IMG/VR virus record: IMGVR_UViG_3300020122_000238
Coordinates: 186,001 to 250,000 of that record
Length of the DNA stretch: 64,000 nucleotides
Direction: 5' to 3' (one strand)
How positions within the stretch are numbered: the first letter of the stretch is position 1; every line of letters begins with the position of its first letter. This document shows, one piece after another, positions 8,913 through 41,065 of this stretch. The notes under the pieces are model-generated. The model was not told where the DNA came from, did no database searches, and worked only from the letters and a program-made list of their open reading frames with translations. The translations under genes were made by a program, and so were the position numbers.

Positions 8913-8943
8913 TTTTGGGGGTCTTCCGGTGTACTAGTTGCTC

Positions 8944-11831: not shown

Positions 11832-13505
11832 ATGAAACGACGTCTTGCCCTCGGGCTTCTCTTCCTGGTCGCTCTGACCCTGTACTACTACGCCCCGGCG
11901 TTCGTTCGCTGGCGGGTGAGCGAGAAACTCGCAGAGCGCTACCCGGATGTGAAGGTGGACCTCATCGAACCCCAATGGGGGAAGACGGTCCTTCACACCG
12001 TGACGTTCGATCGAGATTGGGTCTGCGGGAAGCTCGACACCGTCACGATCACCTGGAAGGACGCCATCACAATCCAGGGGGGCACCGTTCGCGTGTACCC
12101 CGAAAAGCGGCCCGCATCGACTGGGGAGGGGTCTGGCAAAGACATCACCATCACGGACCTCGAAGGTACAGTGATATCCCCCGAAGGTGTCTTTAGCTTC
12201 GGAGGTCTCTCCCTGCATGGCCCCATGGTGACCATCGACAATGTCGGGGCGCACAGGTATGGCCGAAATGCCTACCTCAATGGGGTCAAGTTCAACAAGA
12301 ACCACCTGGACTTCGTTCACGTCGATTCGGCGTCGATGGTCATCCCGGAAGACGGCCCTGACCAGCTCGGGACGTTGACCGCCACAGCTATCGAGGTCTC
12401 CCGCAACCCCGAAAAGGAATGGCGGGCGTCCATCGAACATGCCGAGATCGCGGAGCTGAAAGCGAGCGCTTCGTCAATCCGTCTCGAAGAGTACACGGGC
12501 GAAGACAAGATCCACCGAATGGCCATCCTTCTGGGGGAAGCCACCATCGAGCACCCGAAGCTCTTCAGCAAGCCTCTGACCGTGCATCAGATGCGAATCC
12601 CGGTGGATGCCTACACGTTCGAGAGCGGAGAATTCACGGTCTGGCACAACTCGGCCTTCACCCCTGTGATCAAGGGGAACTTCAGGAAGAAGACCCTTGA
12701 GGGGAAGGGCTCCTGTTCTGATTGGCTTGAGACATTGCCAGACCAGCTCAGGAACGAGTCCGTCAAGCAATTGGACATGACGGGGAACATGTCGTTCGAT
12801 GTCTCGACGGATCCTCCGCACGCCTTCTTTCTCTACACGTGCAAGGTTTCGTGTGATGTCCCGCTGTTCAAGGCTCTCAAAGAGGTGTTCGTTTACCCTA
12901 TCCTTCAGGCGGATGGATCTCCTGGTCTCCGATCGTCGGGACCGAAGGGGAAAGACTGGACGCCACTCTCCCAGGTGAGCCCTGATGTGGTCACGGCTTT
13001 GACCACCATGGAAGACCCGGGCTTCTTCCAGCATCGAGGGCTCAGTGGGATGGCCATCGAGAACTCGTTCCAGATGAACCTCAAGGCGAACAAGTTCGTG
13101 CGCGGGGGATCGACCCTCACGATGCAGCTCGCGAAGAACCTCTGGCTCACTCAGGAGAAGACCCTCGGCCGCAAGGTTCAGGAGGCCTTCTTGACGATGG
13201 GCTTGGAAAGCTGCCTCTCGAAGGAAGAGATCCTCGCGCTCTACGTGAATGTGGTCGAGTTCGGCAAGGGGCTCTACGGGATCAGCCCGGCGGCCCGGAA
13301 GTACTTCAAGACCTCGGCCATGGGCTTGGCTCCCGAGGAGGCCTTCTACCTCGTGTCGATCCTCCCCCATCCTCGGACCGCCAATCCTCCGGATGCGGCC
13401 ACCTTGACCCGCGTGAAGAAGCTGATAGCCCGGTTCACCAAGGAAGGCCGGATCCCCGATATGGGGATCAACGACAGCCCGATCGACGACGCCGGCTGGG
13501 AGTAG
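11832..13505 (+). CDS. membrane-anchored monofunctional peptidoglycan transglycosylase (GT51)
   Basis: N-terminal TM; EDPGFFQHRG, GGSTLTMQLAKNL, RKVQE, KEEILALYVN and YGISPAARKYF motifs; no transpeptidase domain. Confidence 0.9.
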   Translation: MKRRLALGLLFLVALTLYYYAPAFVRWRVSEKLAERYPDVKVDLIEPQWGKTVLHTVTFDRDWVCGKLDTVTITWKDAITIQGGTVRVYPEKRPASTGEGSGKDITITDLEGTVISPEGVFSFGGLSLHGPMVTIDNVGAHRYGRNAYLNGVKFNKNHLDFVHVDSASMVIPEDGPDQLGTLTATAIEVSRNPEKEWRASIEHAEIAELKASASSIRLEEYTGEDKIHRMAILLGEATIEHPKLFSKPLTVHQMRIPVDAYTFESGEFTVWHNSAFTPVIKGNFRKKTLEGKGSCSDWLETLPDQLRNESVKQLDMTGNMSFDVSTDPPHAFFLYTCKVSCDVPLFKALKEVFVYPILQADGSPGLRSSGPKGKDWTPLSQVSPDVVTALTTMEDPGFFQHRGLSGMAIENSFQMNLKANKFVRGGSTLTMQLAKNLWLTQEKTLGRKVQEAFLTMGLESCLSKEEILALYVNVVEFGKGLYGISPAARKYFKTSAMGLAPEEAFYLVSILPHPRTANPPDAATLTRVKKLIARFTKEGRIPDMGINDSPIDDAGWE

Positions 13506-17980: not shown

Positions 17981-18135
17981 TTACCCATCCCTCGAACATC
18001 ACCCAGGATGAAGCTCGGAACATCGGTCTTGCTGTGCTGACAGCAGGACTTGTGGCTGTTGTTGACAGCGTCATACGGCTCGGCTTCTACGAGTTTCAAG
18101 TGTGGCGCGAAGCACGTCGGAAAAAGCCCGAGTAA
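17977..18135 (+). CDS. small membrane protein (52 aa, not in ORF track)
   Basis: TTGA overlap start; IGLAVLTAGLVAVV hydrophobic stretch followed by a basic tail. Confidence 0.45.
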   Translation: MITHPSNITQDEARNIGLAVLTAGLVAVVDSVIRLGFYEFQVWREARRKKPE

Positions 18136-18229
18136 CAAGCTACACCCCGGTGTAGCCGGGTGGCATGAAGCTACTCGGAATTTCTGGGCTTGTCGTTTTC
18201 TATTGCCCCACACAGACACCCAGGACATA

Positions 18230-19558
18230 ATGCGGGCTATGTCTTACCGCAAGATATCAACACGGCGTTTGGAAGTCTACGGCATCTCGGGCAACAAGGG
18301 ACATGGCAAGGACACCTTCGCCAACCTCATCACACAGGCAAACACATCTTACAAAGTTGTCCCTTTCGCAGGGGCACTGAAGCGTATGTCAGCCAGGATC
18401 TTTGGGCTGACATACGCTCAGATGAACGATCCCTCCCTCAAAGAGATACCCCTTCCTCATGCCCGGGACATGGATCTGTTCGTCCCAGCCATGAAAGCCG
18501 AGACTGGACTACACATACAACCGGCGGGCAAGATTGCCCATAGTCCTCGTGAGGTCATGCAGTTTTTCGGGACAGAATATGTCCGAAGGATTCAGGACGA
18601 CTACTGGATCCAAAAACTACTCGCTGAGGTGGGAAACTCTCGACAAGTGCTCATTCCCGACGTCCGCTTTCCGAACGAAGCGGCTGCACTACGTTCTTAT
18701 GGGGGCATCATAATCAAGGTGGAACGGATCGATGCTCCCGTTCCGAAGGATGGGCATCTCTCCGAGACAGAGATGGCCAAAATCATCCCGGATCTTCTAG
18801 TGGGCGCACGGACAGGGGATCTGTCCCTTCCGTCTCGGATCGCGCGTCTCATTGCGATGAACCGTTTCGATTCTGCTACCAGCTACGACTATCGTAAGTC
18901 TAAGGAAGCAATTGCTTCCTATACATCAGGGAAGAGCGCCGAGGAGAGTTCTCTTCTCCTCGGCCACAAGCACCCCTATGCGCTCTACAACACCCTAGAT
19001 TACTATGGGGTACAGCGCCGAAAGCAGGCCCCAAACCGTGTCCACCATAAAGTTGTTGATGGGGTGGTTGGTAAATTCTGCATTCGGTGTGTGTGGCAAC
19101 CTCTGATTGAGTTCAACATGAGCACGAAGGCATGGGACGGTAAACATAGCTTGTGCCGTGCTTGCGCTTCTTTGGATCACAAGGATCGATACCAGAAGTA
19201 CGGGAAGACGGACAGCCTGTCGAGGGTCTACGCGATTTCGAAGAAACAAGCGGCGCAGCGTGGCATTCCCTTCAACTTGAGGGCGAGTGACATCCAATTC
19301 CTTTGGAATGCACAGGGAGGTCGTTGTACTTACAGCGGGCTGGAGATGACGACCGAGCTGAGATCCCCCAACAAGGTCACGATTGACAGAATTGATTCAT
19401 CGAAGGGGTATGAGATCGACAATATCGTTCTCTGCGGCTACCGCGTCAACTTGATGAAACGAGAAATGTCCTTGAGCGAGTTCAAGGGAATGATCCGCAC
19501 GTTGTACGAAAATCTGGCGGGAAGCTCATTCGGGTCGTGCGGCCCGGGGCTGGGCTGA
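18230..19558 (+). CDS. deoxynucleoside monophosphate kinase fused to an HNH-type endonuclease
   Basis: GNKGHGKDT P-loop, PREVMQFFGTE, DVRFPNE; C-terminal CTYSG...TIDRIDSSKGYEIDNIVLC. Confidence 0.85.
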   Translation: MRAMSYRKISTRRLEVYGISGNKGHGKDTFANLITQANTSYKVVPFAGALKRMSARIFGLTYAQMNDPSLKEIPLPHARDMDLFVPAMKAETGLHIQPAGKIAHSPREVMQFFGTEYVRRIQDDYWIQKLLAEVGNSRQVLIPDVRFPNEAAALRSYGGIIIKVERIDAPVPKDGHLSETEMAKIIPDLLVGARTGDLSLPSRIARLIAMNRFDSATSYDYRKSKEAIASYTSGKSAEESSLLLGHKHPYALYNTLDYYGVQRRKQAPNRVHHKVVDGVVGKFCIRCVWQPLIEFNMSTKAWDGKHSLCRACASLDHKDRYQKYGKTDSLSRVYAISKKQAAQRGIPFNLRASDIQFLWNAQGGRCTYSGLEMTTELRSPNKVTIDRIDSSKGYEIDNIVLCGYRVNLMKREMSLSEFKGMIRTLYENLAGSSFGSCGPGLG

Positions 19559-21017: not shown

Positions 21018-21152
21018 AGCCGGGTCCTGTTTTGCGATCCCTCTGGGACCCTTTCCCGCATGTCAGAAGACGACGCTGACGCCTTCTATAGATCCTACAA
21101 AACTGAAGTCCTGCACACATCTGAAATTCTTCGCACAAAAGGTCTCTGGTAG

Positions 21153-21355: not shown

Positions 21356-21439
21356 GGATTCCGAGGGTTTAGCAACAATCGTCCGCCAGCCTGTTGATTT
21401 GTGTGAAAAGCACACCATGGTTGGTGTAGAAGAAACACC

Positions 21440-22156
21440 ATGAGTCACACGTACGAATATCCCCGACCGTCTGTCACGGTCGACTGCGTTGTCTTCGGCG
21501 TCGCAGACCATCTCAAGGAGATGCACGTTCTCCTGGTCCGCCGTGGCTCCGCCCCCTTTCAGGGGTTGTGGGCTCTTCCGGGCGGGTTCGTCGAGACCTC
21601 GGATACCAGAGACCAGGGTGAGTCCCTGGACGAAGCGGCGCAACGTGAGCTGAGCGAGGAGACGGGAGCCCAAGTGGGTTTTCTGGAGCAGCTCGGCACG
21701 TATGGGACGCCCGGAAGGGATCCGCGAGGTCGAGTGATCTCGGTCGCCTACTACGCTCTGGTCCGCCTCGAAGACCATCCGGTCAAGGGTGGTGATGACG
21801 CGGCAGAGGCCAAGTGGTGGCCTCTGCCGAAAGCCCTCCGGCTATACAAGGCTTTCGACCACGACAAGATTCTCAAGGATGCTTGGGCGAGGCTACAGGC
21901 GAAGGTTCGGTATGCCCCCATCGGGTTCAACCTTCTTCCGCCGAAGTTCTCTCTGACGGAGCTGCAATCCCTCTACGAGCTGATCCTCAATCGGACGCTC
22001 GACAAGCGGAACTTCCGCAAGCGCATCCTGGCAATGGGCATCCTCAAAGAGGCGGGTGTCCAGGTTGGTGTCCCGCACCGACGAGCGTGCCTCTACAGAT
22101 TCGACAGCGTTGCTTACAAGCGAGCTGTTCGTGACGGTTTCAACTTCGAGATTTGA
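21440..22156 (+). CDS. nrtR: NrtR-family Nudix/wHTH transcriptional regulator
   Basis: [44 protein letters not shown] and [10 protein letters not shown]; adjacent to nadV. Confidence 0.85.
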
Positions 22157-22166: not shown

Positions 22167-23552
22167 ATGACCACGTACGAAACGAACCCGATCCTCGACA
22201 CCGATAGCTACAAGCTCTCGCACCCCGAGCTGCAATACCCGGCGAACATGACGAGCATGTTCCACTACTTCGAGTCGCGCGGTGGCCGCTACGGCTCGAC
22301 CCTCTTCTTCGGCCTCAGCTATCTGTGCCAGGAGTACCTCAGCAAGGGCTTCACGCAGGACCACGTCAACGAGGCGGCCGACTTCGCCGCAGCCCACGGT
22401 GAGCCCTTCCCCAAGGCCGCCTGGGACCGTCTGGTGGCCAAGGGCGGCTACTACCCGGTGAAGATCAACGCGGTCCCGGAAGGCACGCTCGTCCCGACGC
22501 ACAACGTGCTCATGACGACGGAGTCGACGGACCCCGAGGCCCCGTGGGTCGGTTCGTGGATCGAGAACCAGCTCGTGCGCCTCTGGTATCCGATCACCGT
22601 CGCCACCCAGTCGTTCTTCATCAAGAAGATCATCTTCGAGGCCCTCGTGAAGTCCTCGGATGATCCGGTCGGCGAGATCGGATTCAAGCTCCACGACTTC
22701 GGCAGCCGTGGCGTCAGCTCGCGGGAATCGGCTGGCATCGGCGGCATGAGCCACCTGGTCAACTTCCTCGGTTCGGACACCATCGAGGGCATCCGCTACG
22801 CCAACCACTACTACACGGACAAGATGGCGGGCTTCTCGATCCCCGCGTCGGAGCACTCGACGATCACGAGCTGGGGCAAGTCGAACGAGATCGACGCCTA
22901 CCGCAACATGGTTCACCAGTTCGCGAAGCCGGGCAAGATGTTCGCCTGCGTCAGCGACTCCTACGATCTCTACAACACGGTCGAGAACATCTGGGGTGAC
23001 ATCCTCCGCGAGGAGATCAAGGAGTCGGGTGCGACCCTCGTGATCCGGCCGGACTCGGGCAATCCCTCGGAGGTCATCCTCAAGTGCCTCCAGATCTTGG
23101 AGCGCAAGGTCGGGATGACGACCAACACCAAGGGCTTCAAGGTCCTCCCGAAGTACATCCGCCTGATCCAGGGCGACGGCGTGAACGAAGAGTCGATTCG
23201 CGAGATCCTCAACGTGATGATGGCCAACGGCTACAGCGCCTCGAACATCGGATTCGGCATGGGTGGCGCTCTGCTCCAGGGTGTCAATCGCGACACCCAG
23301 CGCTTCGCCTACAAGTGCTCGGAGGTCCTGGTCGATGGTGAGACCCGCGAGGTCTTCAAGGACCCCGTCACCGACAAGGGCAAGCGCTCGAAAGCGGGCC
23401 GCGTCGACCTCATCCACGAGAACAGCGAGTTTAAGACCGTTCGGGGTACACGTCGGAACAGCGCTCTCATCTCGGTCTTTGAGAACGGCAAGATCCTGGT
23501 TCAGCCGACCCTCGCCGAGATCCGGAAAATCTCGGAACGTCACATCTTCTGA
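22167..23552 (+). CDS. nadV: nicotinamide phosphoribosyltransferase (NAMPT)
   Basis: DTDSYKLSH, LHDFGSRG, PASEHST, VSDSYD, VIRPDSG, IQGDG, FGMGGALLQ. Confidence 0.95.
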   Translation: MTTYETNPILDTDSYKLSHPELQYPANMTSMFHYFESRGGRYGSTLFFGLSYLCQEYLSKGFTQDHVNEAADFAAAHGEPFPKAAWDRLVAKGGYYPVKINAVPEGTLVPTHNVLMTTESTDPEAPWVGSWIENQLVRLWYPITVATQSFFIKKIIFEALVKSSDDPVGEIGFKLHDFGSRGVSSRESAGIGGMSHLVNFLGSDTIEGIRYANHYYTDKMAGFSIPASEHSTITSWGKSNEIDAYRNMVHQFAKPGKMFACVSDSYDLYNTVENIWGDILREEIKESGATLVIRPDSGNPSEVILKCLQILERKVGMTTNTKGFKVLPKYIRLIQGDGVNEESIREILNVMMANGYSASNIGFGMGGALLQGVNRDTQRFAYKCSEVLVDGETREVFKDPVTDKGKRSKAGRVDLIHENSEFKTVRGTRRNSALISVFENGKILVQPTLAEIRKISERHIF

Positions 23553-23640
23553 CCCCAAGAAGAAACCTTCGGTAGGTGAAGGGTATCTGGTGTACCTCTC
23601 ATCTACCGAAGCCTACCCCCAAGAAGAAAAGAGGCCCATC

Positions 23641-23820
23641 ATGGGTTCCAGCGTCTACAGCGAAGAGTTCAGCGACAAGGCCAAGCAGGCTGTGAGCGAG
23701 ACCGTCCCGGCGACCCCGGCGGTGGTGTCTCCGCCGGGAACGGAGACCAAGGAAGAGCCCTCCGTCCCGACCCCGGCTCCCACCACGACCCCGACCGGCG
23801 AGACCCCGGCGACCCCCTGA
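23641..23820 (+). CDS. 59-aa Pro/Thr-rich peptide whose N-terminus mimics the downstream vWA protein
   Basis: MGSSVYSEEF versus MGGSSYSEDF; GC3-biased codons. Confidence 0.55.
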   Translation: MGSSVYSEEFSDKAKQAVSETVPATPAVVSPPGTETKEEPSVPTPAPTTTPTGETPATP

Positions 23821-23895: not shown

Positions 23896-24855
23896 ATGGG
23901 CGGATCCAGCTACAGCGAAGACTTCTACCATGCCCGAGCCAAAGAGCGCGAACGTACGAAGACCCCGACCTTCGCACACAGCGTGACGACGGCCACGAAG
24001 CCGGCCCACGAGCAGCGTACGCACGCACTGCTCGACCCCAAGAACAAGCTCATCCGCGAGTCGCGCGATTCGAAGGCTCATCCCGAGTCCCTCGCCGTCG
24101 CCGTGATGTTTGACGTGACGGGCTCGATGGCGGCGACTCCGACGGTCTTCCAGACCAAGCTTCCGCGGCTGATGAACCTCCTCACGGCGACCGGCGTCCA
24201 GCACCCGCAGCTCCTCTTCGGATGCGTCGGTGACGCGGTCTCCGACAAGGGCTCGATTCAGATCGGCGAGTTCGAGTCCGGCAACGAGATGGACGAGACC
24301 TTCAGCCACGTCTGGCTGGAAGGTCATGGTGGCGGCACGAACCAGGAGAGCTACCAGAACGCGCTCTACTTCTTCGCCCGGCACACGCAGATCGACTGCG
24401 TCGAGAAGCGCAACAAGAAGGGCTACCTCTTCTTGCTCGGTGACGAGGAGGCCTACCCCGTGGTGCGCCGACGGGAAGTCGAGGCGCTCTTCGGCGAGAC
24501 GATCCAGGAGGATATCTCGCTGGAGAACATCATTGCGGAAGCCCACGACAAGTACAACGTCTTCTTCGTCATCCCGGCCGAGACGCAGGGAGGGCGGAAC
24601 CCGGCGATCCGCAACTACTGGGTCGACCGCTTCGACGAAACCCACGTTCTCAACCTGACCTCCGCCGAGGGCGTGGCCGAAACGATCGCCCTCACCGTGG
24701 GGCTCTGCGAAGGGACGACCAACCTCGACGCGGCTCGCCAGGACCTCGTGACCGCGGGTGTCTCGACCAAGCTGATCAACGACACCATCGCCAGCCTGAC
24801 GCCCCTCGCTGAGAGCCTCGGCAAGGCCAGCACCAGCTCGACCATCCGGCTCTAG
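23896..24855 (+). CDS. vWA-like protein of the type linked to PurA-like genes
   Basis: FDVTGSM, VGDA..D, EGHGGG..ESY, ARHT.IDC.EKR.KKGYLF..GDE. Confidence 0.85.
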   Translation: MGGSSYSEDFYHARAKERERTKTPTFAHSVTTATKPAHEQRTHALLDPKNKLIRESRDSKAHPESLAVAVMFDVTGSMAATPTVFQTKLPRLMNLLTATGVQHPQLLFGCVGDAVSDKGSIQIGEFESGNEMDETFSHVWLEGHGGGTNQESYQNALYFFARHTQIDCVEKRNKKGYLFLLGDEEAYPVVRRREVEALFGETIQEDISLENIIAEAHDKYNVFFVIPAETQGGRNPAIRNYWVDRFDETHVLNLTSAEGVAETIALTVGLCEGTTNLDAARQDLVTAGVSTKLINDTIASLTPLAESLGKASTSSTIRL

Positions 24856-24858
24856 GGG

Positions 24859-24884
24859 TTGATCAGACGGGCCGTTCTCTTGTA
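24859..24884 (+). promoter_or_regulatory. class I motif TTGATC-N16-TGTA
   Basis: 10 nt upstream of TTG 24895. Confidence 0.7.
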
Positions 24885-24894
24885 CAGTCCGACA

Positions 24895-25310
24895 TTGCAA
24901 CCCAACACGTTCTGCGGCTTCTGCGGCTTCCGATTTTTCGAGGGAGCCGCATGGCCTCGGAAGTGTTCAAATTGTACACGAACAACCTACCGGAATCCAA
25001 TGCCGGTAGTCGTGGCCATCATTTTCGTTCGTGGATTCGACCCCGACGAAAGTACCACATGGAAGTCTCCGAAGAAGTAGGAATAGTCACCTCTTCTTTG
25101 GAGTACCGTCTCCTCAACATCAAGACATCAACCACAGGATCGAGCCTGCTCATCTTCTGTGCAGGTCCGATCGTCCGCTGGGACGAGGTCGAATGGGCAT
25201 TCAAACCCAACAGGGAGGTCTCCGAGGTTGCTGTTGCCACCTTCGAGACTGAGCTGGGCTTCTCGCTTCACACGGAAGCCCTTCGTCAATACGCCCTCAA
25301 CCCAGTATAA
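24895..25310 (+). pseudogene. disrupted Zn-ribbon Nudix hydrolase
   Basis: FCGFCG..WPRKCSNC...YRNPMPVV in one frame and EVSEEVGI (end of Nudix box) plus the C-terminus in another; the strand leading to PGG is missing. Confidence 0.7.
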
Positions 25311-25361
25311 TTTTCCTCGCATGGGGATCTATACAAGGCTCCCCACCTTGTATAGATCCCC

Positions 25362-25568
25362 ATGCCCATCGAACTCTCTCCCCAGCTCATGAACACCCTC
25401 GCCGGCTTGATCGGTGAAGGCGCTTCCATCGATGACCTGTTCGCCCGTCTGCGGGAGGAAGGGGACATCCCGGAACACGAGTTTCCGGGCATCCTCTGCA
25501 AGGTGCTGACGACCACCTTGGCGGAGAACACCAACAACTTCCGCAACCAGCTCGTGAAGTTCCTGTGA
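25362..25568 (+). CDS. hypothetical protein
   Basis: 68 aa; GC3 bias. Confidence 0.6.
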   Translation: MPIELSPQLMNTLAGLIGEGASIDDLFARLREEGDIPEHEFPGILCKVLTTTLAENTNNFRNQLVKFL

Positions 25569-25843
25569 ACCTCGAAATTCACGACAACACGACGGATGAG
25601 GGGGGCACCTTGATAGGAGTCGCCAGAAATCTGGACTACATGTACCAGGCGGAGCAGTGGGTGATCGACTCCAAGGACGAGAGGCGGGTCGCTCGCTTCG
25701 TCCTGTTCTCGGGCCCTATGACGCCGATTCGCGAATGGCGTATGGTCAACGGAGAGCCGAGCGACGTCCCCATCACGCCGGGGACGGTCGCCGATCCCCG
25801 AACGTTCGCCCGCGAGACAACGGACCGAACATGTAGAGGTTGA
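25565..25843 (+). CDS. hypothetical protein
   Basis: GTGA overlap start; its stop lies within the next TTGATC. Confidence 0.6.
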   Translation: MNLEIHDNTTDEGGTLIGVARNLDYMYQAEQWVIDSKDERRVARFVLFSGPMTPIREWRMVNGEPSDVPITPGTVADPRTFARETTDRTCRG

Positions 25844-25865
25844 TCGGCAGCTCCCTCGGACTGTA
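25840..25865 (+). promoter_or_regulatory. class I motif TTGATC-N16-TGTA
   Basis: 8 nt upstream of ATG 25874. Confidence 0.75.
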
Positions 25866-25873
25866 GGACGGGC

Positions 25874-26107
25874 ATGAACACTGAAGAAATGGTGGACGCC
25901 CTATTCGCCAACAAGCCCGTGAAAGTCAGAGTGCCCGAAACGGGCCTGGCGTTCACGATCGCTCCGAAGAGGGGGTCTTTCGGGATCCTGTTCTTCGGGA
26001 TCATCCCCGAGGGAAAGAAGCGCGCTCTGAAAACTCATGGGTACATGCTCATGGGGCGGAATGAGATGTGGGCCTGGGTAAACAGTCTTGAGTCCGTGGA
26101 GAACTGA
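25874..26107 (+). CDS. hypothetical protein
   Basis: 77 aa after a class I motif. Confidence 0.65.
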   Translation: MNTEEMVDALFANKPVKVRVPETGLAFTIAPKRGSFGILFFGIIPEGKKRALKTHGYMLMGRNEMWAWVNSLESVEN

Positions 26108-26108
26108 C

Positions 26109-26468
26109 ATGTTGAGCACCATTGAACGAGCCATTGCTCTCAGAACGCACTACCGGGAAATCCTGGTCGCTCGCAACGGACACTGGGGTACTTGCTCTGG
26201 GTGCCCTCGCGACGAAGATGGTGTCCCACACCCTGGACGCTGTTCGGAGTATTCGCGATCCGATCATCACATTCCGGCCAGCGAAACGCATCGTGGTGAA
26301 GGCGTAAACACGACCGAAGCCATCGCTGCATTGGCTCGGGTTCTTTACGAGCGCGCTCCGAAGCCTGTGAAGACTGGCCACGCGGAAGCCGACGCGAAAG
26401 CGGAATGGCTGGCTGCGTGGGGCTGTGTGGAAGAAGCCGAGAAGAAATTTTATCCTCCTCGTGGTTGA
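26109..26468 (+). CDS. hypothetical protein
   Basis: ATG 1 nt after the upstream stop; its stop lies within the next TTGATC. Confidence 0.55.
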   Translation: MLSTIERAIALRTHYREILVARNGHWGTCSGCPRDEDGVPHPGRCSEYSRSDHHIPASETHRGEGVNTTEAIAALARVLYERAPKPVKTGHAEADAKAEWLAAWGCVEEAEKKFYPPRG

Positions 26469-26490
26469 TCGACAGCCACCCCCGACTGTA
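26465..26490 (+). promoter_or_regulatory. class I motif TTGATC-N16-TGTA
   Basis: 8 nt upstream of ATG 26499. Confidence 0.75.
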
Positions 26491-26498
26491 GGACTCCC

Positions 26499-26861
26499 AT
26501 GACGACCACCAAGTACGACTTCACCAAGCTCACCGCGGACCTCAAGGCTGGCCTCCTCGTGGCCAAGCAGGTTGCGGCGGCCACCCACGACGGCGGCACC
26601 TGTAACTTCGACGCCCCCAAGTTCCACTTCGATCGTTCACCGTCCCCCAAGGTGCGGGCGGAGTTCGAGAAGGCCGCAACGGAAGCGGGGGTTCCCGGCT
26701 ACTGGACGGGGGACACGTTCGGCCGTCACCAAAACCGTCGCTTCGTCTTCGGTCCCGGGTGCGGCGGGCAGGGCCACTCGCGCACGAAGGCCGCGGAAGC
26801 TCTCAAGGATCACCTCGTCGCTGCGGGCTGGGACGTCAGCATGTACTACCAGGCGGACTGA
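26499..26861 (+). CDS. hypothetical protein
   Basis: 120 aa; strong GC3 bias. Confidence 0.75.
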   Translation: MTTTKYDFTKLTADLKAGLLVAKQVAAATHDGGTCNFDAPKFHFDRSPSPKVRAEFEKAATEAGVPGYWTGDTFGRHQNRRFVFGPGCGGQGHSRTKAAEALKDHLVAAGWDVSMYYQAD

Positions 26862-27106
26862 TCATGGGACGCCTGGTAGTTACCGTGAGGGGAGAATGCG
26901 AGCACCACAAGCGACGCGGACATCTACTGTGATGTCCGCGTCGCTTGTGGTGCAACGATCCTCCGCGTCGAGATGATAGGGGACTACCCCTCCACGGGCG
27001 CCCACATCTACGTGAAGTGCCAAAAATCTCCCGCCGAGCTGTCCGCGGCTATCGACGCTGCGGACGAGATCCCGCAATATTCAATCAGGACGGAAGTAGA
27101 GCGAAA

Positions 27107-28423
27107 ATGAGTAACGTAATCCTGATCGCGGGCCTCAACTACGGAGATGAGGGCAAGGGGACGACCGTCGACTACCTCGCTCGGAAGCACGAAGCGCACA
27201 CGGTCGTCCGCTACAACGGCGGAGCCCAAGCAGGCCATTCGGTGGTCCTGGAGGATGATCGGCACCACACCTTCGCCCAGTTCGGGAGCGCCACCTTCGT
27301 CCCTGGGGTGAAGACGCACCTCAGCCGGCACATGCTCATCAACCCGATCTTCATGATGTCTGAGGAGAAGCACCTCCGCACTGTCGGCGTCGAGGATGCC
27401 TTCGAACGGATGACCATCGAACGGGATGCGCTGATCACGACTCCCTACCATGTCGCCGCGAATCGCATCCGGGAGATGGCTCGCTCAAACCGCCACGGAT
27501 CTTGTGGGATGGGAATCGGCGAGACGGTGAGCAGTCACCTGTTCCACCCTCAAGAGGATCTCCGGATTGGGGATCTGGAAGGGCCAATCACCGCGCGATT
27601 GGAGCAGATCCGAGCGCGGTATTTGTGGGAGCTGGCTACTCTGCACATTCCCGAGTGCAAGTTCCGCGACTACGATTGCATCTGCCCGTTCAAGCATGAA
27701 TGGGGCATGCTCTTGAACAAGAGCCTTCTCCCCTTGATTGTGGGGTTGCTCACGGGATTTCTCAAGCTCCCGCTCAAGGTTGTCGATGAGACCTACCTCC
27801 CGCTCATCATGGGGGAAGGGACCACGATCTTCGAGGGTGCTCAGGGTGTCCTCCTTGATCAGGACTACGGGTTCCACCCCTACACGACCTGGTCCGACAC
27901 GACCTTCAGCAACGCCCTCAACCTGATCGAAGGCTTCTCTGGAGACGTAAGGAAGATCGGGATCGTTCGATCCTACATGACCCGGCACGGGGCGGGCCCA
28001 TTCGTCACGGAAGATGTCACCCTCCAGCTCCCCTCCACGAAGGTTGAGCACAACTCGCTCAATCCCTGGCAATCGAATTTCCGGGTGGGGCATTTCGACG
28101 CCTTCGCGACCAATTACGCCCTCAAGGTGATTGGGGGTGTCGACGAGATCGCCATGACACACTGCGATGTGCCAAGTAGTGGTAAAATTTGTGTTGGATA
28201 CAGGGGAGAGTTTACCCCCGAAGTGCTTCAGGATATGCCGCATGTGAAGCATATTCGTGAAGACCTCGACGTTCGTACGGGTATCACAAATGCTCTTTTC
28301 AATGTCTTTCCGGTGTACTTGACCGATGTGGCAGAGAAGGATTTCATCCCCAAAATTGAAGATTTCGTGGGGACTCCCATCACCATCAAGTCGTACGGCC
28401 CCACGGCCAAGGACAAGCGATAA
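27107..28423 (+). CDS. divergent adenylosuccinate synthetase (PurA)-like ligase
   Basis: GDEGKG, GGAQAGH, EGAQGVLLD, TRHGAGPF and SYGP are present; the aspartate-binding TTGRxR loop is replaced by HNSLNPWQSNFR. Confidence 0.85.
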   Translation: MSNVILIAGLNYGDEGKGTTVDYLARKHEAHTVVRYNGGAQAGHSVVLEDDRHHTFAQFGSATFVPGVKTHLSRHMLINPIFMMSEEKHLRTVGVEDAFERMTIERDALITTPYHVAANRIREMARSNRHGSCGMGIGETVSSHLFHPQEDLRIGDLEGPITARLEQIRARYLWELATLHIPECKFRDYDCICPFKHEWGMLLNKSLLPLIVGLLTGFLKLPLKVVDETYLPLIMGEGTTIFEGAQGVLLDQDYGFHPYTTWSDTTFSNALNLIEGFSGDVRKIGIVRSYMTRHGAGPFVTEDVTLQLPSTKVEHNSLNPWQSNFRVGHFDAFATNYALKVIGGVDEIAMTHCDVPSSGKICVGYRGEFTPEVLQDMPHVKHIREDLDVRTGITNALFNVFPVYLTDVAEKDFIPKIEDFVGTPITIKSYGPTAKDKR

Positions 28424-29337
28424 TGGACCCCATCAAGATCATCCTCCCGCCCACCAGGCCCAAGCACGCGACGAACGCGTGGGAAGCCCTCATGGCGGAT
28501 GATGATGGTATCCTTGAGGGTGATACCGCGACCTTCACCTTCGACACGAAGGTTGCGGAAGGGGACCTCTGCGACATCTACCGAGGCACCTACAACGGCC
28601 GCCCGGCGGCTTTGAAGGTGTCCCATGGGGTCGACGTCAACGACCTCGTCGAGCATGAGGCGGACGTCATCCGGCACCTCTTCCCCGCAGAAGAGGCGAA
28701 CGTCGGGTTCCTCCGCTACCTCTCCAAGCTCAGCTACTCCTTCCATGACGAACGGGAGGGAAAGCGGATCAACGTCTTCCCCTGGCTCGGAGAACATGTC
28801 TCCGTCGCCGACATCCTGAAGGCGTATCCAGGCGGCATCGAGTACCAAAACATGGTCTGGATGTTCAAGCGTGGACTGGAAGGCCTCGGATACGTTCACG
28901 AAAAGAACGTCATTCACGGTGCGGTCCTCCCCCCGCATCTGCTGATCCATCCGGCCGACCACGGGGCCAAGCTGATCGACTGGTCCTACGCCGTCCTCAA
29001 CGCGGACGCACGACGGAACAAGGTCCGGGCCATGTCCGCACCCTGGAGGTCCTTCTATGCCCCCGAGATTCCCGGGAAAGGGATCCCGACGGCGGCGACG
29101 GATATCTACATGCTGGCCAAGTGCATGGTCGCTCTGCAAGGCGGGGACGTCACCACGGACGCGATGCCGGATACGACCCCAGAGCCCATTCAGAGGTTCT
29201 TGAGGGAGTGCCTGTCTCCCATGCAGCACCTTCGGCCGAACAGCGCATGGGATCTCGTCGAGGAGTTCAACGCGCTTCTTCGCTCCGTGATCGGCCCGCC
29301 GAAATACTTCAAGTTCGAGATGTCCCCCAAGGTGTAA
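28423..29337 (+). CDS. Ser/Thr kinase-fold protein lacking the catalytic HRD Asp (pseudokinase-like)
   Basis: AALKV and EHE kept; HGAVLPPH replaces HRDLKPEN; DWS replaces DFG; coupled to the PurA-like gene. Confidence 0.75.
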   Translation: MDPIKIILPPTRPKHATNAWEALMADDDGILEGDTATFTFDTKVAEGDLCDIYRGTYNGRPAALKVSHGVDVNDLVEHEADVIRHLFPAEEANVGFLRYLSKLSYSFHDEREGKRINVFPWLGEHVSVADILKAYPGGIEYQNMVWMFKRGLEGLGYVHEKNVIHGAVLPPHLLIHPADHGAKLIDWSYAVLNADARRNKVRAMSAPWRSFYAPEIPGKGIPTAATDIYMLAKCMVALQGGDVTTDAMPDTTPEPIQRFLRECLSPMQHLRPNSAWDLVEEFNALLRSVIGPPKYFKFEMSPKV

Positions 29338-39251: not shown

Positions 39252-39994
39252 CATTGGCCAACGCCAGGCAGACGCACAAGTTTCAGGGCCCCGTTGTGGC
39301 TAACGAGAGGCGCCAGCTCGGGACTCCGGAACACGTCGAACAGGTGCATATCCTGACCGTCGACCGTGCAGCCCAACGAGACAAGGGTGACCGTCTGGCT
39401 GTAGTCCGTGTGCGCCATGTTGTGTCGCCACCCACAACCCTGAATGACGCGGACGAAGCGCCCCTTGGAGTCCTTCGAAAGAGAGACATTGGCTTCCCCT
39501 CGGATGCCCTTGTACCCCACGCCCTCGAAGTGCCAGCCGTAGTTCTCGACGAAGCCCGGGTGCGAGAGAATGGCGTTGTCGAGGACCCAGTGCTTGCCGA
39601 CGTTGCACACGAGGCCCTCAGGGTTCCCTTGCGCAGCGAGAGCCGTGTCAATCCGGCCGCTATGGGCGAGCATTGCAGCCGTTGAAGAATTGAACGGCTG
39701 AATCGAAGGCCCGAGAGTAACAACTTTCTGCGTCCAGATGAGATCCGCCAGCTTCGGGGTGAGTAGAGAACAGCCAAGAAGATCCGCGAGGTGCTGCTCC
39801 GTTTCGGCGGAAGCGTTGATCCGCACGCCCTCGATTTTGAGCGCATCCGAGAAGACCTGGAACTCGGCGTGGTGATCGCCATGGTCGGAGGTGACCGTGG
39901 ACCACAAGATAGGGTCAAAGGTCCCTTCTGCGACGAGTGCTCGGATTGCTTGTTCGCGAGCAGGGCCAGCGGACGGGGGAAGGTTCAGGCTCAT
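39251..39994 (-). CDS. hypothetical protein
   Basis: 247 aa with GC3 bias; ENYGWH and HNMAHTDYSQ conserved-looking motifs. Confidence 0.75.
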   Translation of the reverse strand: MSLNLPPSAGPAREQAIRALVAEGTFDPILWSTVTSDHGDHHAEFQVFSDALKIEGVRINASAETEQHLADLLGCSLLTPKLADLIWTQKVVTLGPSIQPFNSSTAAMLAHSGRIDTALAAQGNPEGLVCNVGKHWVLDNAILSHPGFVENYGWHFEGVGYKGIRGEANVSLSKDSKGRFVRVIQGCGWRHNMAHTDYSQTVTLVSLGCTVDGQDMHLFDVFRSPELAPLVSHNGALKLVRLPGVGQ

Positions 39995-40027
39995 ACTGAG
40001 GATCTTCCTAAAAAAACCCTATACACG

Positions 40028-41065
40028 ATGGCCATGATCGGACTCCGGGTGCCTCCCGAAACTGCTCAACTCCTGAAGCAGATCGACCTCAAGGGATTTG
40101 GGGTCCCCGAGCCTATGGATCAAGCGCACATCACGCTGCTCCATTTGGGGGATGATGTTCCGATTGAGTCTCTGACCGAGGCAATTCGGGTGTTGTACAC
40201 AGTGGCCTCGAAGACCAGACCATTTGCTGTGCAGACGAGCCGAGCGACAACCTTCCCGCCCCAAGATGGGAAGAAGACTCCCATGATTGCTCAGGTGGAC
40301 TCCAATGCCCTCCACGACTTCCACCGAGCCCTACAAGAAGCCTTCGAGGCTGCCGGGATCGACTTCTCGAAGAAGTGGCCCGAGTTCAAGCCTCATGTGA
40401 CTTTGGGGTATTCTAAAGACCCTTTGGTCGATGCAGACCACGTATTCGATGAGACTTTCCCTACGGTCGAGTGGGGCGCCCATGAAGCTGTGCTTTTTGG
40501 GGGTGACAAAGGAAAACAGACCATGATGGTAACAACCCCCTTCTCTCTGAGCCCCTTTCGCCAGGCTGTCCGACAGGCCATGTTCCGAGCTGCCAACCGG
40601 CCCTACGAACACGACCAGGAGGCTCAAAGCGAGAAGAAGGAGCTTCTTAAGAAGCTCGAATTGCTTTCCCAAGCAGCCTATGCTTCGGGAGACAACGCAA
40701 TGGCGTCCTTCGCAGAAAGTCTGGGGATGCAACTCGAACGAGCGGACACAGCCTGGAACTTCAGTCTCCCCCAAGAACGGAAACTCCGGGAAGGCCTACA
40801 ACAGTACCATCACCTGATGTCTCACCCGGCTGAGCTTGATCGACTGTTTGAAGAGAAGAACCGAGCCCCTCAAGTCAGCCCCGCGGAGCAGACGAGAAAC
40901 CTTCGGATCCGAATCAACCAGCTCCTCGATGCCGCGAAGCAAGATGGGGACAACTGGGTGATCAGTTTCGCAACCAATATCGGGAACATGGTGCGAAACA
41001 ACCGACAGCTATCTCCCGCTCAAAGCAACGCGCTGGAGAAAGCATTCAAGAAGTACCGTCTTTGA
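40028..41065 (+). CDS. 2H phosphoesterase (LigT/Acb1-like) with C-terminal extension
   Basis: two HxT motifs: AHITLLHLG and KPHVTLGY. Confidence 0.75.
   Translation: MAMIGLRVPPETAQLLKQIDLKGFGVPEPMDQAHITLLHLGDDVPIESLTEAIRVLYTVASKTRPFAVQTSRATTFPPQDGKKTPMIAQVDSNALHDFHRALQEAFEAAGIDFSKKWPEFKPHVTLGYSKDPLVDADHVFDETFPTVEWGAHEAVLFGGDKGKQTMMVTTPFSLSPFRQAVRQAMFRAANRPYEHDQEAQSEKKELLKKLELLSQAAYASGDNAMASFAESLGMQLERADTAWNFSLPQERKLREGLQQYHHLMSHPAELDRLFEEKNRAPQVSPAEQTRNLRIRINQLLDAAKQDGDNWVISFATNIGNMVRNNRQLSPAQSNALEKAFKKYRL

What the first reader, a model, noticed from the sequence alone, without database searches (positions are those of the whole stretch)
23896..29337. vWA + Nudix + PurA-like ligase with a rewired substrate loop + pseudokinase: a nucleotide-ligation module of unknown product
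Seen: the PurA-like protein keeps the catalytic Asp in GDEGKG, the His in AGH, EGAQG and TRxGxGPF. It loses the aspartate-recognition loop (E. coli GATTGRRRR, here EHNSLNPWQSNFR), has GSCG in place of the IMP-site GTT, and THCD in place of TKLD. Established: PurA activates the 6-oxo of IMP with GTP and ligates an amine; PurZ is the known phage repurposing, and this is not PurZ. The gene is stop/start-coupled to a kinase-fold protein. It lies downstream of a vWA protein and a Zn-ribbon Nudix, a four-gene combination I recall from bacterial (notably actinobacterial) genomes but cannot verify here. Inference: the enzyme joins a purine nucleotide to a non-aspartate amine, possibly a protein or peptide. 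The Nudix would be the eraser and the vWA a target or scaffold. Placement directly after nrtR-nadV suggests a role in nucleotide-based conflict.
Basis: partly seen in the sequence, partly recalled or inferred. Interest (0 to 1): 0.82.

Follow-up and report, generated by a model that had tools for sequence, protein, structure and literature searches.

The report
Rewired PurA ligase cassette in phage
A jumbo phage carries a gene cassette, shared with hundreds of bacteria and phages, built around a copy of the purine enzyme PurA whose aspartate pocket has been rebuilt; it probably joins a nucleotide to something other than aspartate, possibly the tip of its partner protein, and no function has been described for it.

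Summary
The window (IMG/VR contig, 275 kb) encodes a vWA-fold protein, a PurA-family protein and a kinase-fold protein just after nrtR-nadV. The Zn-ribbon Nudix between them is broken here: a deletion removes half the Nudix box and shifts the frame.

The PurA-like protein keeps the GTP site and the catalytic Asp/His/Gln. The aspartate loop and most IMP ribose-phosphate contacts are replaced by different, clade-invariant residues. It is neither a canonical PurA nor PurZ.

- vWA-like plus PurA-like are adjacent in 74 of 77 bacterial loci and 60 of 61 viral loci.
- A kinase-like gene, lacking the catalytic Asp and usually carrying a J domain, joins them in most.
- An NrtR-like Nudix regulator with its own operator heads the operon in Actinomycetota.
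- About 200 Bixzunavirus mycobacteriophages carry the trio.
- NadV, NMNAT-Nudix, NADAR and KptA recur nearby.

The vWA-like protein has an invariant N-terminal Met-Gly motif. The motif is copied onto mini-proteins in the NadV-linked phages.

My best reading, which is inference: a GTP-dependent ligase that uses this N-terminal glycine instead of aspartate, deployed under ADP-ribose/NAD stress. I found no paper on the cassette. The product is unknown.

The parts
21401..21415 (.). Palindrome GTGTG-N5-CACAC, 25 nt upstream of nrtR; candidate NrtR operator
   Evidence: It is the only exact copy in the window. Among 168 loci, the same palindrome occurs only just upstream of the NrtR-like gene in the sister phages and in the Pirellulales locus L082. 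Binding was not tested.
21440..22156 (+). NrtR-like protein: Nudix domain plus winged-helix domain
   Evidence: Pfam NUDIX 8e-22 and NrtR_WHD 3e-23. It is 40% identical to the NrtR-like first gene of the Micromonospora operon. The REUXEEXGU part of the Nudix box is intact in the translation.
22167..23552 (+). NadV / nicotinamide phosphoribosyltransferase
   Evidence: Pfam NAMPT_N and NAPRTase. I took the start as the in-frame ATG after the nrtR stop; the ORF listed from GTG 22056 overlaps nrtR.
23641..23820 (+). 59-aa mini-protein that shares the N-terminal motif of the vWA-like protein (MGSSVYSEEF...), followed by a Pro/Thr-rich tail
   Evidence: There is an AAGAGG ribosome-binding site upstream. 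The ORF is conserved in the sister contigs. Mini-ORFs with the same N-terminus sit in the same place, between nadV and the vWA-like gene, in the more distant phage loci L092, L093, L094 and L097.
23896..24855 (+). vWA-fold (MIDAS) protein of a distinct family: invariant N-terminal Met-Gly motif and a C-terminal ...RL
   Evidence: AlphaFold model pLDDT 91. Foldseek matches integrin I domains and the SpaC vWA domain. PHROG 2971, 2e-45. It is 40% identical to the Micromonospora operon member. Invariant residues: G2, Y11, the RESRDS motif, D73-x-T75-x-S77, D183.
24859..25310 (+). Zn-ribbon (NudC-like) Nudix gene, disrupted: internal deletion plus frameshift
   Evidence: Alignment with the intact homologue L003:5071-5601 (Pfam NUDIX 4e-13) shows loss of the first half of the Nudix box and a change of frame.
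25319..25365 (.). Perfect 20-nt inverted repeat after the Nudix remnant. Similar hairpins lie at 23567-23611 and 26891-26964.
   Evidence: the repeat finder pairs I1, I2 and I3. These are probably terminators or processing sites between transcription units; not tested.
25362..26861 (+). Small ORFs of unknown function (25362-25568, 25874-26107, 26109-26468, 26499-26861); lineage-specific filler, not part of the conserved cassette
   Evidence: They are 76-88% identical to the genes of sister contig L003. They are absent between the vWA-like and PurA-like genes in other lineages. No Pfam hits; one PHROG of unknown function.
27107..28423 (+). PurA-family GTP-dependent ligase with re-specified substrate pockets
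   Evidence: Pfam PF00709, 3e-63, full length. Far below all purA equivalog cut-offs, and the PurZ model scores 42 against a cut-off of 300. Model pLDDT 87; TM 0.75-0.78 to E. coli and mouse AdSS, 0.59 to PurZ. Clade signature.
28423..29337 (+). Kinase-fold protein without the catalytic Asp (H-G-A in place of H-R-D). This phage lineage lacks the J domain found in most relatives.
   Evidence: Pkinase 27.4 bits, under the 31.7 cut-off. PHROG 3043 'kinase', 2e-35. It is 32-34% identical to the Micromonospora and Cane17 proteins. Motif analysis. Structural neighbours in the atlas are named J-domain/DnaJ proteins.

Best explanation
The finding is one copy of a widespread, self-contained cassette. 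Its core is a PurA-derived enzyme and a MIDAS-type vWA protein. A J-domain pseudokinase usually joins them.

Shown:
- The enzyme keeps the P-loop, the guanine-specificity Asp, and the catalytic Asp, His and Gln of adenylosuccinate synthetase.
- The residues that hold aspartate, and most of those that hold the ribose 5'-phosphate of IMP, are replaced by other residues that are invariant in the clade.

Inferred:
- It still uses GTP to phosphorylate a lactam oxygen, of a 6-oxopurine nucleotide or a close analogue, and lets a primary amine displace the phosphate.
- That amine is not aspartate.
- The most likely amine is the free alpha-amine of the invariant N-terminal glycine of the partner vWA protein, exposed after the initiator Met is removed. 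The mini-proteins that carry the same N-terminus in NadV-linked phages would be further acceptors.
- The product would be a protein N-terminus joined to C6 of a purine nucleotide.
- The pseudokinase would act as a nucleotide-binding scaffold that, through its J domain, recruits DnaK.
- In Actinomycetota the operon is headed by an NrtR-type, ADP-ribose-sensing Nudix regulator with its own operator. In phages the cassette travels with NAD+ salvage genes. I therefore infer that it is used when NAD+ is being broken down to ADP-ribose.

What the modified protein then does is unknown.
For: Enzyme (119 clade members):
- Kept (E. coli numbering): D13, K16, H41, Q224 and D333 in 119/119; T239 in 117/119; S414 in 112/119.
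- Changed: T301 to W (115), G302 to Q (119), R305 to F (104), V273 to H (119), T129 to C (119), I126 to H (119), N38 to Q (113). R303 is variable. R143 is mostly Asp or Glu.

Fold: closest to long-form AdSS, not PurZ.

Obligate pairing:
- PurA-like lies directly after vWA-like in 74 of 77 bacterial loci and 60 of 61 viral loci.
- Only three gene families are broadly conserved around it.
- In isolated phages the hit counts match: 201/200/201 Mycobacterium phages for the three genes. The 10 Rhizobium and 6 Vibrio phages have only the vWA-like plus PurA-like pair.

N-terminus (n = 154):
- G2 in 154/154; an aromatic residue at position 6 in 154/154; S7 in 141; Y11 in 144.
- Profile matches begin at residue 1 of nearly all relatives.
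- Both termini are flexible in the model.
- The motif alone is copied onto mini-ORFs between nadV and the vWA-like gene in seven phage loci (three of them the window's own contig and two near-identical sister contigs), spanning lineages whose vWA-like proteins are only about 49% identical to the window's.
- The motif persists in cassettes without a kinase, so its partner is not the kinase.

Pseudokinase: the Lys, Glu, DFG-Asp, APE, subdomain-IX Asp and subdomain-XI Arg are kept; HRD is H-G-A. An HPD-containing J domain is present in the five bacterial and Bixzunavirus homologues aligned and in further homologues from several phyla.

ADP-ribose/NAD context:
- NrtR-like gene in 59 of 74 loci.
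- A single GTTnTTCTC-N5-GAGAAnAAC operator upstream of it in 21 loci.
- L082: NrtR, NADAR, KptA, then the cassette.
- L107: NrtR, vWA-like, NMNAT-like Nudix, NadV, PurA-like, kinase, NADAR.
- Va1: NADAR next door. RHph_TM40: NMNAT/Nudix and a PRTase nearby.
Against: - Nothing here shows catalysis, a product or a protein adduct.
- I know of no precedent for ligating a purine to a protein N-terminus.
- If IMP were still the substrate, the wholesale change of its 5'-phosphate contacts (T129C, R143 to an acidic residue, N38Q) would be unexpected. The oxo-substrate is therefore uncertain.
- The many invariant polar residues of the vWA-like protein suggest it binds a ligand or has a role beyond being a substrate.
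- The N-terminal motif could be a docking or pseudo-substrate peptide rather than a nucleophile.
- This window's kinase-like protein has no J domain and its Zn-Nudix is broken, so parts of the general model do not apply to this copy.
- I could not inspect the pocket in 3-D. The rewired loop is the least confident part of the model (residues 311-314, pLDDT below 50).
Confidence: 0.33

Rival explanations
1. Small-molecule enzyme plus activase. The PurA-like protein aminates or ligates a free metabolite of NAD/ADP-ribose or purine salvage. Examples: direct NH3-dependent amination of a 6-oxopurine or pyridone/nicotinate-type nucleotide, or of a dinucleotide with a hypoxanthine base. The vWA-like protein and the J-domain pseudokinase (with DnaK) serve as its assembly, activation or regulatory factors, as MIDAS-vWA adaptors do for Rubisco (CbbO) or NO reductase (NorD).
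For: - NadV, NMNAT-Nudix, NADAR, KptA and NrtR recur beside or inside the cassette in unrelated lineages.
- The IMP 5'-phosphate contacts are rebuilt, as expected for a different nucleotide.
- New invariant His, Cys, His and Trp residues could form a closed pocket or a metal site.
- PurZ shows that phages do repurpose this fold for another small molecule.
- vWA proteins have been predicted as peptide-binding chaperones in NrtR-regulated ADP-ribose operons (PMC9503650).
Against: - It does not explain why Gly2 and the N-terminal motif are invariant and sit at the extreme N-terminus.
- It does not explain why phages copy that motif onto mini-proteins.
- No glutaminase, lyase or other pathway enzyme is co-conserved.
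- In most loci there are no NAD genes other than NrtR.
Confidence: 0.27
2. Conflict system. In bacteria the cassette is an ADP-ribose-induced sensor or signal generator: the vWA domain senses peptides and the PurA-like protein makes a modified nucleotide. Large phages carry copies, and N-terminal decoy mini-proteins, as counter-defence.
For: - It is patchy across Actinomycetota, Chloroflexota, Planctomycetota and Myxococcota.
- It is abundant in large phages: 438 IMG/VR contigs.
- Decoy-like mini-proteins occur only in phages.
- An intein interrupts the vWA-like gene in some Bixzunaviruses.
- The NrtR-type sensor parallels the predicted anti-ADP-ribosylation operons.
Against: - No effector gene (nuclease, NADase, pore) is linked.
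- No PADLOC model matches the vWA-like or PurA-like protein.
- The cassette is very uniform in composition and order, unlike typical fast-changing defence loci.
- Bacterial and phage versions are ordinary homologues, 40-50% identical.
Confidence: 0.15
3. It is still an adenylosuccinate synthetase, an auxiliary purine gene that binds aspartate in a different way.
For: - Full-length Pfam PF00709 match.
- Public records annotate it as adenylosuccinate synthetase.
- The catalytic residues and GTP site are intact.
Against: - T300, T301, R303 and R305 of the aspartate loop and V273 are all replaced, in a clade-conserved way.
- It scores 158-168 bits against purA equivalog cut-offs of about 395-402.
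- Its strict linkage to a vWA-like gene, and the absence of purB linkage, would be unexplained.
Confidence: 0.06
4. Carboxylate activation. The enzyme phosphorylates the conserved C-terminal ...RL carboxylate of the vWA-like protein, and the N-terminal Gly of another copy or of a mini-protein attacks it. The result is head-to-tail protein ligation.
For: - Both termini of the vWA-like protein are conserved: R at -2 in 116/154 and L at -1 in 122/154.
- Both termini are flexible.
- Three mini-proteins carry internal TRF(D/E)RIL motifs.
- From general knowledge, relatives of the PurA fold (cobyrinic acid amidases, formyl-THF synthetase) activate carboxylates.
Against: - The residues that serve lactam chemistry in PurA (D13 as the base for N1-H, and Q224) are invariant.
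- No PurA-family enzyme is known to act on a carboxylate.
- The window's own mini-protein lacks the RL motif.
Confidence: 0.04

Closest known systems
Adenylosuccinate synthetase PurA (EC 6.3.4.4; Pfam PF00709)
   Same: Same fold over the full length (TM 0.75-0.78 to E. coli and mouse enzymes). The P-loop GDxGKG, catalytic Asp13, His41 and Gln224, the TR.G.GPF segment, the guanine-binding Asp333 and the S-x-G-P motif are all kept.
   Different: The aspartate loop G-A-T-T-G-R-R-R-R is replaced by a clade-specific (G/N)-P-W-Q-x-x-F-R. Other changes: V273H, T129C, I126H, N38Q, R143 to an acidic residue, K331H. It scores far below every purA equivalog cut-off and is always paired with a vWA-like gene.
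PurZ (phage N6-succino-2-amino-2'-deoxyadenylate synthase)
   Same: A phage-borne repurposing of the PurA fold. RefSeq and PHROGs label the Bixzunavirus relatives '2-aminooxy adenylosuccinate synthetase', which looks like a garbled PurZ name.
   Different: The NCBIfam PurZ model scores 42 bits against a cut-off of 300. TM is only 0.59 and identity 16-17% to solved PurZ/DgsS structures. This is the long-form enzyme, not the short PurZ form. From general knowledge, PurZ keeps aspartate as substrate; this clade has lost the aspartate loop.
NrtR-regulated ADP-ribose-processing operons with vWA 'chaperones', predicted by Iyer, Burroughs, Anantharaman and Aravind 2022 (PMC9503650)
   Same: A Nudix-wHTH (NrtR-type) regulator heads an operon that contains a vWA protein. 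The operon is found in actinobacteria and planctomycetes, and NADAR is an occasional accessory.
   Different: Those systems are centred on an ADP-ribosylglycohydrolase plus phosphatases. PurA-like and kinase-like genes are not mentioned: the terms 'PurA' and 'succin' do not occur in that paper.
MIDAS-vWA adaptor plus ATPase pairs (CbbO/CbbQ, NorD/NorQ, CoxE/CoxD); comparison from general knowledge
   Same: A vWA protein with a MIDAS motif is encoded next to the enzyme it serves, together with a chaperone-type partner.
   Different: There is no AAA+ MoxR ATPase here. The only chaperone link is the J domain on the pseudokinase, which would recruit DnaK. This vWA family also has conserved extreme termini that those adaptors are not known to have.
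NAD+ reconstitution by phages (NadV/Nampt plus NMNAT)
   Same: The window has nrtR-nadV directly upstream. In locus L107 the NMNAT-like Nudix and NadV genes lie inside the cassette.
   Different: Most copies of the cassette, in bacteria and in Bixzunavirus, have no NadV or NMNAT next to them. The cassette is therefore not simply part of that pathway.

Membership tests
Adenylosuccinate synthetase superfamily (Pfam PF00709) | Full-length match to the family profile, and the same fold | tested here: met
   214 bits against a cut-off of 27, covering residues 7-435. Foldseek TM 0.75-0.78 to solved AdSS structures.
Canonical PurA (functional adenylosuccinate synthetase) | Score above the NCBIfam equivalog cut-offs (TIGR00184, NF002223) | tested here: not met
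   158 against 395.55, and 167.7 against 402.
Canonical PurA (functional adenylosuccinate synthetase) | Aspartate-binding loop (E. coli T300, T301, R303, R305) and Val273 | tested here: not met
   Replaced by P/W/variable/F, and by His at 273. W301 is found in 115/119, Q302 in 119/119 and H273 in 119/119 clade members.
Canonical PurA (functional adenylosuccinate synthetase) | IMP 5'-phosphate contacts (N38, T129, R143 of the partner subunit, T239) | tested here: not met
   N38Q, T129C (119/119) and R143 mostly Asp or Glu. Only T239 is kept. The list of contacts is from my knowledge of the E. coli structures.
Canonical PurA (functional adenylosuccinate synthetase) | GTP site and catalytic residues (D13, K16, H41, Q224, D333) | tested here: met
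   All invariant in 119 clade members and in the window protein.
PurZ | Score above the NCBIfam NF038379 cut-off; short-form fold | tested here: not met
   42.1 bits against 300, N-terminal part only. TM 0.59 and 17% identity to S-2L PurZ.
von Willebrand factor A (vWA) domain | Rossmann-like vWA fold with a MIDAS motif (D-x-S/T-x-S ... D) | tested here: met
   No Pfam hit. The model (pLDDT 91) matches integrin I/beta-I, vWF A and SpaC domains at probability 1.0, with TM by target 0.5-0.64 for isolated I domains. D73-x-T75-x-S77 and D183 are invariant.
Active Ser/Thr protein kinase | Catalytic Asp of the HRD motif | tested here: not met
   H165-G-A167 is invariant in 8 homologues from phages and four bacterial phyla. 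Lys65, Glu79, Asp186, Glu215, Asp227 and Arg271 are kept. Pkinase scores 27.4, below the cut-off of 31.7.
J-domain protein | HPD motif in an N-terminal J domain | tested here: not met
   Absent from the window protein and its sister. Present in the Micromonospora, Cane17, Chloroflexota, Planctomycetota and Myxococcota homologues. Atlas neighbours are named J-domain/DnaJ.
Nudix hydrolase (the Zn-ribbon gene at 24859-25310) | Complete Nudix box G-x5-E-x7-REUxEExGU in one reading frame | tested here: not met
   The first half of the box is deleted and the frame is shifted relative to the intact L003 homologue. Neither piece gets a Pfam NUDIX hit.
NrtR (ADP-ribose-responsive Nudix regulator) | Nudix domain plus the NrtR winged-helix domain; operator near its own gene | tested here: met
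   Both Pfam domains are present. A candidate palindrome lies 25 nt upstream and is conserved in the sister phages and L082. ADP-ribose binding and DNA binding are not testable here.
Known anti-phage defence systems (PADLOC 2.0) | Match of the core proteins to a system model | tested here: not met
   No hit for the vWA-like or PurA-like protein. The kinase-like protein gives only generic kinase-domain matches (MkoA, mad6, PD-T4-6).

The most novel reading that the evidence does not exclude
The cassette is a protein-modification system of a new chemical kind. A PurA-derived, GTP-driven ligase joins the free N-terminal glycine of a dedicated vWA protein, and of phage mini-proteins with the same tag, to C6 of a purine nucleotide ('N-terminal purinylation'). 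It is switched on by ADP-ribose through NrtR, and large phages use it while NAD+ is being destroyed.
Probability: 0.25. Interest if true: 0.9.

Novelty: new variant of a known kind. Interest (0 to 1): 0.76.

Why it matters
If the enzyme has a new amine substrate, it would be only the second known repurposing of the adenylosuccinate synthetase fold after PurZ. If the amine is a protein N-terminus, it would be a new type of protein-nucleotide linkage.

The cassette is common:
- at least 595 bacterial species,
- 438 viral contigs,
- about 2,300 sequence clusters of the vWA-like partner,
- about 200 well-studied mycobacteriophages that grow on M. smegmatis, so it can be tested at the bench now.

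Its repeated association with NrtR, NadV, NMNAT, NADAR and KptA places it in the NAD+/ADP-ribose contest between phages and bacteria. The known counter-measures there (NAD+ reconstitution, signal sponges) do not include anything like it.

It also corrects annotation. The relatives are labelled as adenylosuccinate synthetase or, in garbled form, as PurZ, and their kinase as an active Ser/Thr kinase. The sequence supports none of these labels.

Tried and rejected
- PurZ and canonical PurA: rejected by model scores, fold ranking and residue analysis.
- Near-identical DNA in isolated phages: none.
- PADLOC: no system match.
- Literature: nine full-text searches found only genome announcements and the Aravind-lab survey of NAD/ADP-ribose systems, which does not mention this cassette.
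- Further conserved neighbours: all-against-all clustering of ORFs in 80 bacterial and 80 viral loci found none beyond the three or four cassette genes. The bacterial clustering was blurred by spurious long ORFs in high-GC DNA.
- The actinobacterial NrtR operator: not found in the window, even with 3 mismatches.
- Read support for the Nudix deletion: one soil run holds only short fragments of this phage, with none across 24958-25345, so this was uninformative.
I rebuilt the alignment without them.
- The structure tools return no coordinates. I could not measure whether H126, C129, H273 and H294 form a metal site, or dock the N-terminal peptide.
- The exhaustive profile search lists only the 150 closest relatives, so distant vWA-like relatives with other partner enzymes could not be sampled.
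- Loci L009 and L016 lack a PurA-like gene next to the vWA-like gene. I did not resolve why.

Full report
**What is in the window.** The window is part of IMG/VR contig IMGVR_UViG_3300020122_000238 (275,300 bp). G+C is about 59%. Gene content is phage-like: dNMP kinase fused to an endonuclease, an RNA-ligase-like gene and several PHROG families.

On the + strand the region reads as follows.

| Coordinates | Feature | Evidence |
|---|---|---|
| 21440-22156 | nrtR | |
| about 22167-23552 | nadV | |
| 23641-23820 | 59-aa ORF | |
| 23896-24855 | vWA-like gene | |
| 24859-25310 | Zn-ribbon Nudix remnant | |
| 25362-26861 | small ORFs and hairpins | |
| 27107-28423 | PurA-like gene | |
| 28423-29337 | kinase-like gene | |

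The kinase-like start overlaps the PurA-like stop by one base (TAATG).

The PurA-like protein matches Pfam PF00709 over its whole length (3e-63). It reaches only 158-168 bits against purA equivalog cut-offs near 400, and 42 bits against the PurZ cut-off of 300. Its AlphaFold model (pLDDT 87) is closest to E. coli and mouse adenylosuccinate synthetases (TM 0.75-0.78). Solved PurZ structures come well behind (TM 0.59 or less).

The 'vWA' protein has no Pfam hit. Its model (pLDDT 91) matches integrin I and beta-I domains, vWF A domains and the SpaC adhesin. It carries D73-x-T75-x-S77 and D183.

The kinase-like protein is just under the Pkinase threshold but matches PHROG 3043 'kinase'.

The one factual correction concerns the Nudix. 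Compared with the intact 176-aa gene of a sister contig (L003, Pfam NUDIX 4e-13), the window copy has lost about 90 nt. These encode the first half of the Nudix box, and the frame changes. The only public run that holds this phage has no contig over that stretch, so the deletion could not be checked independently.

**The co-conservation is real.** A Micromonospora echinospora locus has four overlapping or abutting genes:
- an NrtR-like gene (40% identical to the window's),
- a kinase-like gene (32%),
- a vWA-like gene (40%),
- a PurA-like gene (46%).

They are mostly Actinomycetota, with Chloroflexota, Planctomycetota and Myxococcota. In the best 80 loci:

| Neighbour of the vWA-like gene | Loci with it |
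|---|---|
| PurA-like gene directly downstream | 74 of 77 with room |
| Kinase-like gene directly upstream | 70 of 77 |
| NrtR-like gene further upstream | 59 of 74 |
| Zn-ribbon Nudix after the PurA-like gene (Kitasatospora/Streptomyces) | 7 of 80 |

*Viral contigs.* In IMG/VR, 438 contigs encode a relative, many of them 100-500 kb. Of 61 loci with full flanks, 60 have the PurA-like gene and at least 47 the kinase-like gene. Clustering all neighbouring ORFs shows only these three families to be broadly conserved: 69, 63 and 61 of 80 loci, with the next family at 10.

*Isolated phages.* The three genes hit 201, 200 and 201 Mycobacterium phages, all cluster C/Bixzunavirus, for example Cane17 gp250, gp251 and gp253. 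Ten Rhizobium and six Vibrio phages have only the vWA-like plus PurA-like pair. The minimal core is therefore the vWA-like and PurA-like genes. The vWA-like family has about 2,300 representatives at 50% identity.

**The enzyme.** I aligned 119 clade members with E. coli PurA.

Kept in the whole clade:
- the P-loop residues G12, D13, K16 and G17;
- H41, Q224 and T239;
- the TR.G.GPF segment;
- D333, which reads guanine;
- the S414-x-G-P motif.

Changed, and fixed as something else:

| E. coli residue | In the clade | Count of 119 |
|---|---|---|
| T301 | W | 115 |
| G302 | Q | 119 |
| R303 | variable | - |
| R305 | F | 104 |
| V273 | H | 119 |
| I126 | H | 119 |
| T128 | S | 119 |
| T129 | C | 119 |
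| N38 | Q | 113 |
| Q34 | N | 111 |
| R143 | mostly E or D | - |
| K331 | mostly H | - |
| S240 | W or R | - |
| P135 | E | 118 |

By my knowledge of the E. coli structures, T300, T301, R303, R305 and V273 form the aspartate site. N38, T129, R143' and T239 hold the IMP 5'-phosphate.

So the phosphotransfer machinery is preserved, while both the amine pocket and the ribose-phosphate pocket were rebuilt and then frozen. That is the pattern of a changed specificity, not of decay. The rewired loop is the least confident part of the model, as expected for a loop that orders on its substrate.

**The partner proteins.**

*vWA-like protein.* It has unusually conserved ends. Among 154 homologues:
- G2 is present in all;
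- an aromatic residue sits at position 6 in all;
- S7 in 141, D9 in 107, Y11 in 144;
- the C-terminus is R-L in 104 (R at -2 in 116, L at -1 in 122).

Both ends are flexible in the model. Profile matches begin at residue 1 of almost every relative.

Phages that place nadV next to the cassette also carry a mini-ORF between nadV and the vWA-like gene. It starts with the same motif and continues as low-complexity sequence: 59 aa here and in the sister contigs, and 81, 63, 94 and 67 aa in L092, L093, L094 and L097. The vWA-like proteins of those four loci are only about 49% identical to the window's. None was found in the bacterial loci. The N-terminal motif is therefore a functional unit in its own right. 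It is also kept in the kinase-less Rhizobium and Vibrio phage cassettes, so its partner is not the kinase.

*Kinase-like protein.* It keeps the ATP-binding Lys and Glu, the DFG Asp (as D-W), the APE Glu, and the subdomain IX Asp and XI Arg. It has H-G-A where the catalytic H-R-D should be, in every homologue examined. Most homologues, including those of Bixzunavirus and four bacterial phyla, begin with a J domain carrying HPD. Atlas structural neighbours are named J-domain/DnaJ proteins. The window's lineage has lost the J domain.

**Link to ADP-ribose and NAD+.**
- In 21 actinobacterial loci a palindrome, GTTnTTCTC-N5-GAGAAnAAC, occurs exactly once per 17-kb locus, 26-136 nt upstream of the estimated start of the NrtR-like gene in all but one locus, where it lies about 250 nt upstream. 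The operon is evidently under NrtR control there.
- The window lacks that site. It has GTGTG-N5-CACAC 25 nt before nrtR, shared only with the sister phages and with Pirellulales locus L082.
- L082 reads NrtR, NADAR, KptA/Tpt1, J-kinase, vWA-like, PurA-like.
- Viral locus L107 reads NrtR, vWA-like, a Nudix protein with an NMNAT-like N-terminus, NadV, PurA-like, kinase-like, then NADAR a little further on.
- Vibrio phage Va1 has NADAR just upstream. Rhizobium phage RHph_TM40 has NMNAT/Nudix and a Ter-type PRTase nearby.
- Most copies, however, have no NAD gene other than NrtR.

**Interpretation.** The shown facts are a re-specified PurA-family enzyme, an obligate vWA partner with a portable N-terminal Gly tag, a pseudokinase, and ADP-ribose-linked regulation and neighbours.

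My preferred mechanism is inference. PurA chemistry needs a primary alpha-amine. The residues that bind the side-chain carboxylate of aspartate are gone. An always-exposed N-terminal glycine is the only conserved amine-bearing feature tied to the enzyme. I therefore propose that the enzyme ligates an activated 6-oxopurine-type nucleotide to that glycine (confidence about 0.3).

The main rival, about equally likely, is a small-molecule reaction in NAD/purine salvage, with the vWA protein and J-pseudokinase as activase or regulator. It explains the context better and the N-terminal tag worse.

A conflict-system reading, an unchanged PurA and a carboxylate-ligase reading are less likely, for the reasons given under the rival explanations.

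**Comparison with what is known.** I found no paper on this cassette. The nearest described concept is the set of NrtR- or WYL-regulated ADP-ribosylglycohydrolase operons with vWA 'chaperones' predicted by Iyer et al. 2022, which does not include these genes. PADLOC has no model for it.

I therefore rate it a new variant of a known enzyme kind, embedded in a gene system that has not been described. Interest is high because it is widespread, conserved, mis-annotated and testable in M. smegmatis phages.

Noticed in passing
L001 (Mycobacterium phage Cane17) 3897-5714: The vWA-like gene gp251 (605 aa) is interrupted by a Hint/intein-like insert just before the conserved LF..GDE strand. In phage CharlieB the same place is annotated as an HNH endonuclease. 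The annotated start is probably 12 codons too early: the conserved MGSGAW N-terminus begins at 3933.
   Followed up: partly
RefSeq and PHROG annotation of the Bixzunavirus relatives: The product name '2-aminooxy adenylosuccinate synthetase' appears to be a garbled PurZ name transferred to proteins that fail the PurZ model. Their partner is annotated 'serine/threonine kinase' although it lacks the catalytic Asp.
   Followed up: partly
window 23567-23611, 25319-25365, 26891-26964: There are long, near-perfect hairpins (19-34 nt arms) in the intergenic gaps after nadV, after the Nudix remnant and before the PurA-like gene. A half-site of the second also occurs at 21082-21095. They may be terminators, processing sites or a phage repeat element.
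   Followed up: no
window 26973-27110: A 45-aa ORF ends in ATGA overlapping the PurA-like start. At the same place the sister contig L003 carries a 189-aa HNH/endonuclease VII-like gene, a mobile insertion absent here.
   Followed up: partly
L092:8699-8944, L094:8661-8945, L097:5322-5525: The mini-proteins of these phages carry one or two internal TRF(D/E)RIL motifs, reminiscent of the ...RL C-terminus of the vWA-like protein. The window's mini-protein has none.
   Followed up: no
L035 6425-8484: A Chloroflexota locus has two tandem vWA-like paralogues before the PurA-like gene. Both have the MGSGRWSTDVY N-terminus and an ...RRL end.
   Followed up: no
window 21401-21415 and L082 4908-4922: The candidate NrtR operator of this phage lineage is identical in form to the one in a Pirellulales genome and differs from the actinobacterial one. 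This is a weak hint that the host is a planctomycete.
   Followed up: no
window 8938-10074, 11832-13505, 18050-19558, 39791-41065: Other notable genes in the window: a second, unrelated vWA protein (weak Pfam VWA); a protein with a PBP-type peptidoglycan glycosyltransferase domain (PF00912); a dNMP kinase fused to an endonuclease VII/HNH domain; and an RNA-ligase-like protein.
   Followed up: no
L009 and L016: Two bacterial loci have the vWA-like gene without a PurA-like neighbour. In L016 (Caldilinea) a sigma-70/TPR gene lies on the opposite strand instead. They may be decayed cassettes or the enzyme may be encoded elsewhere.
   Followed up: partly
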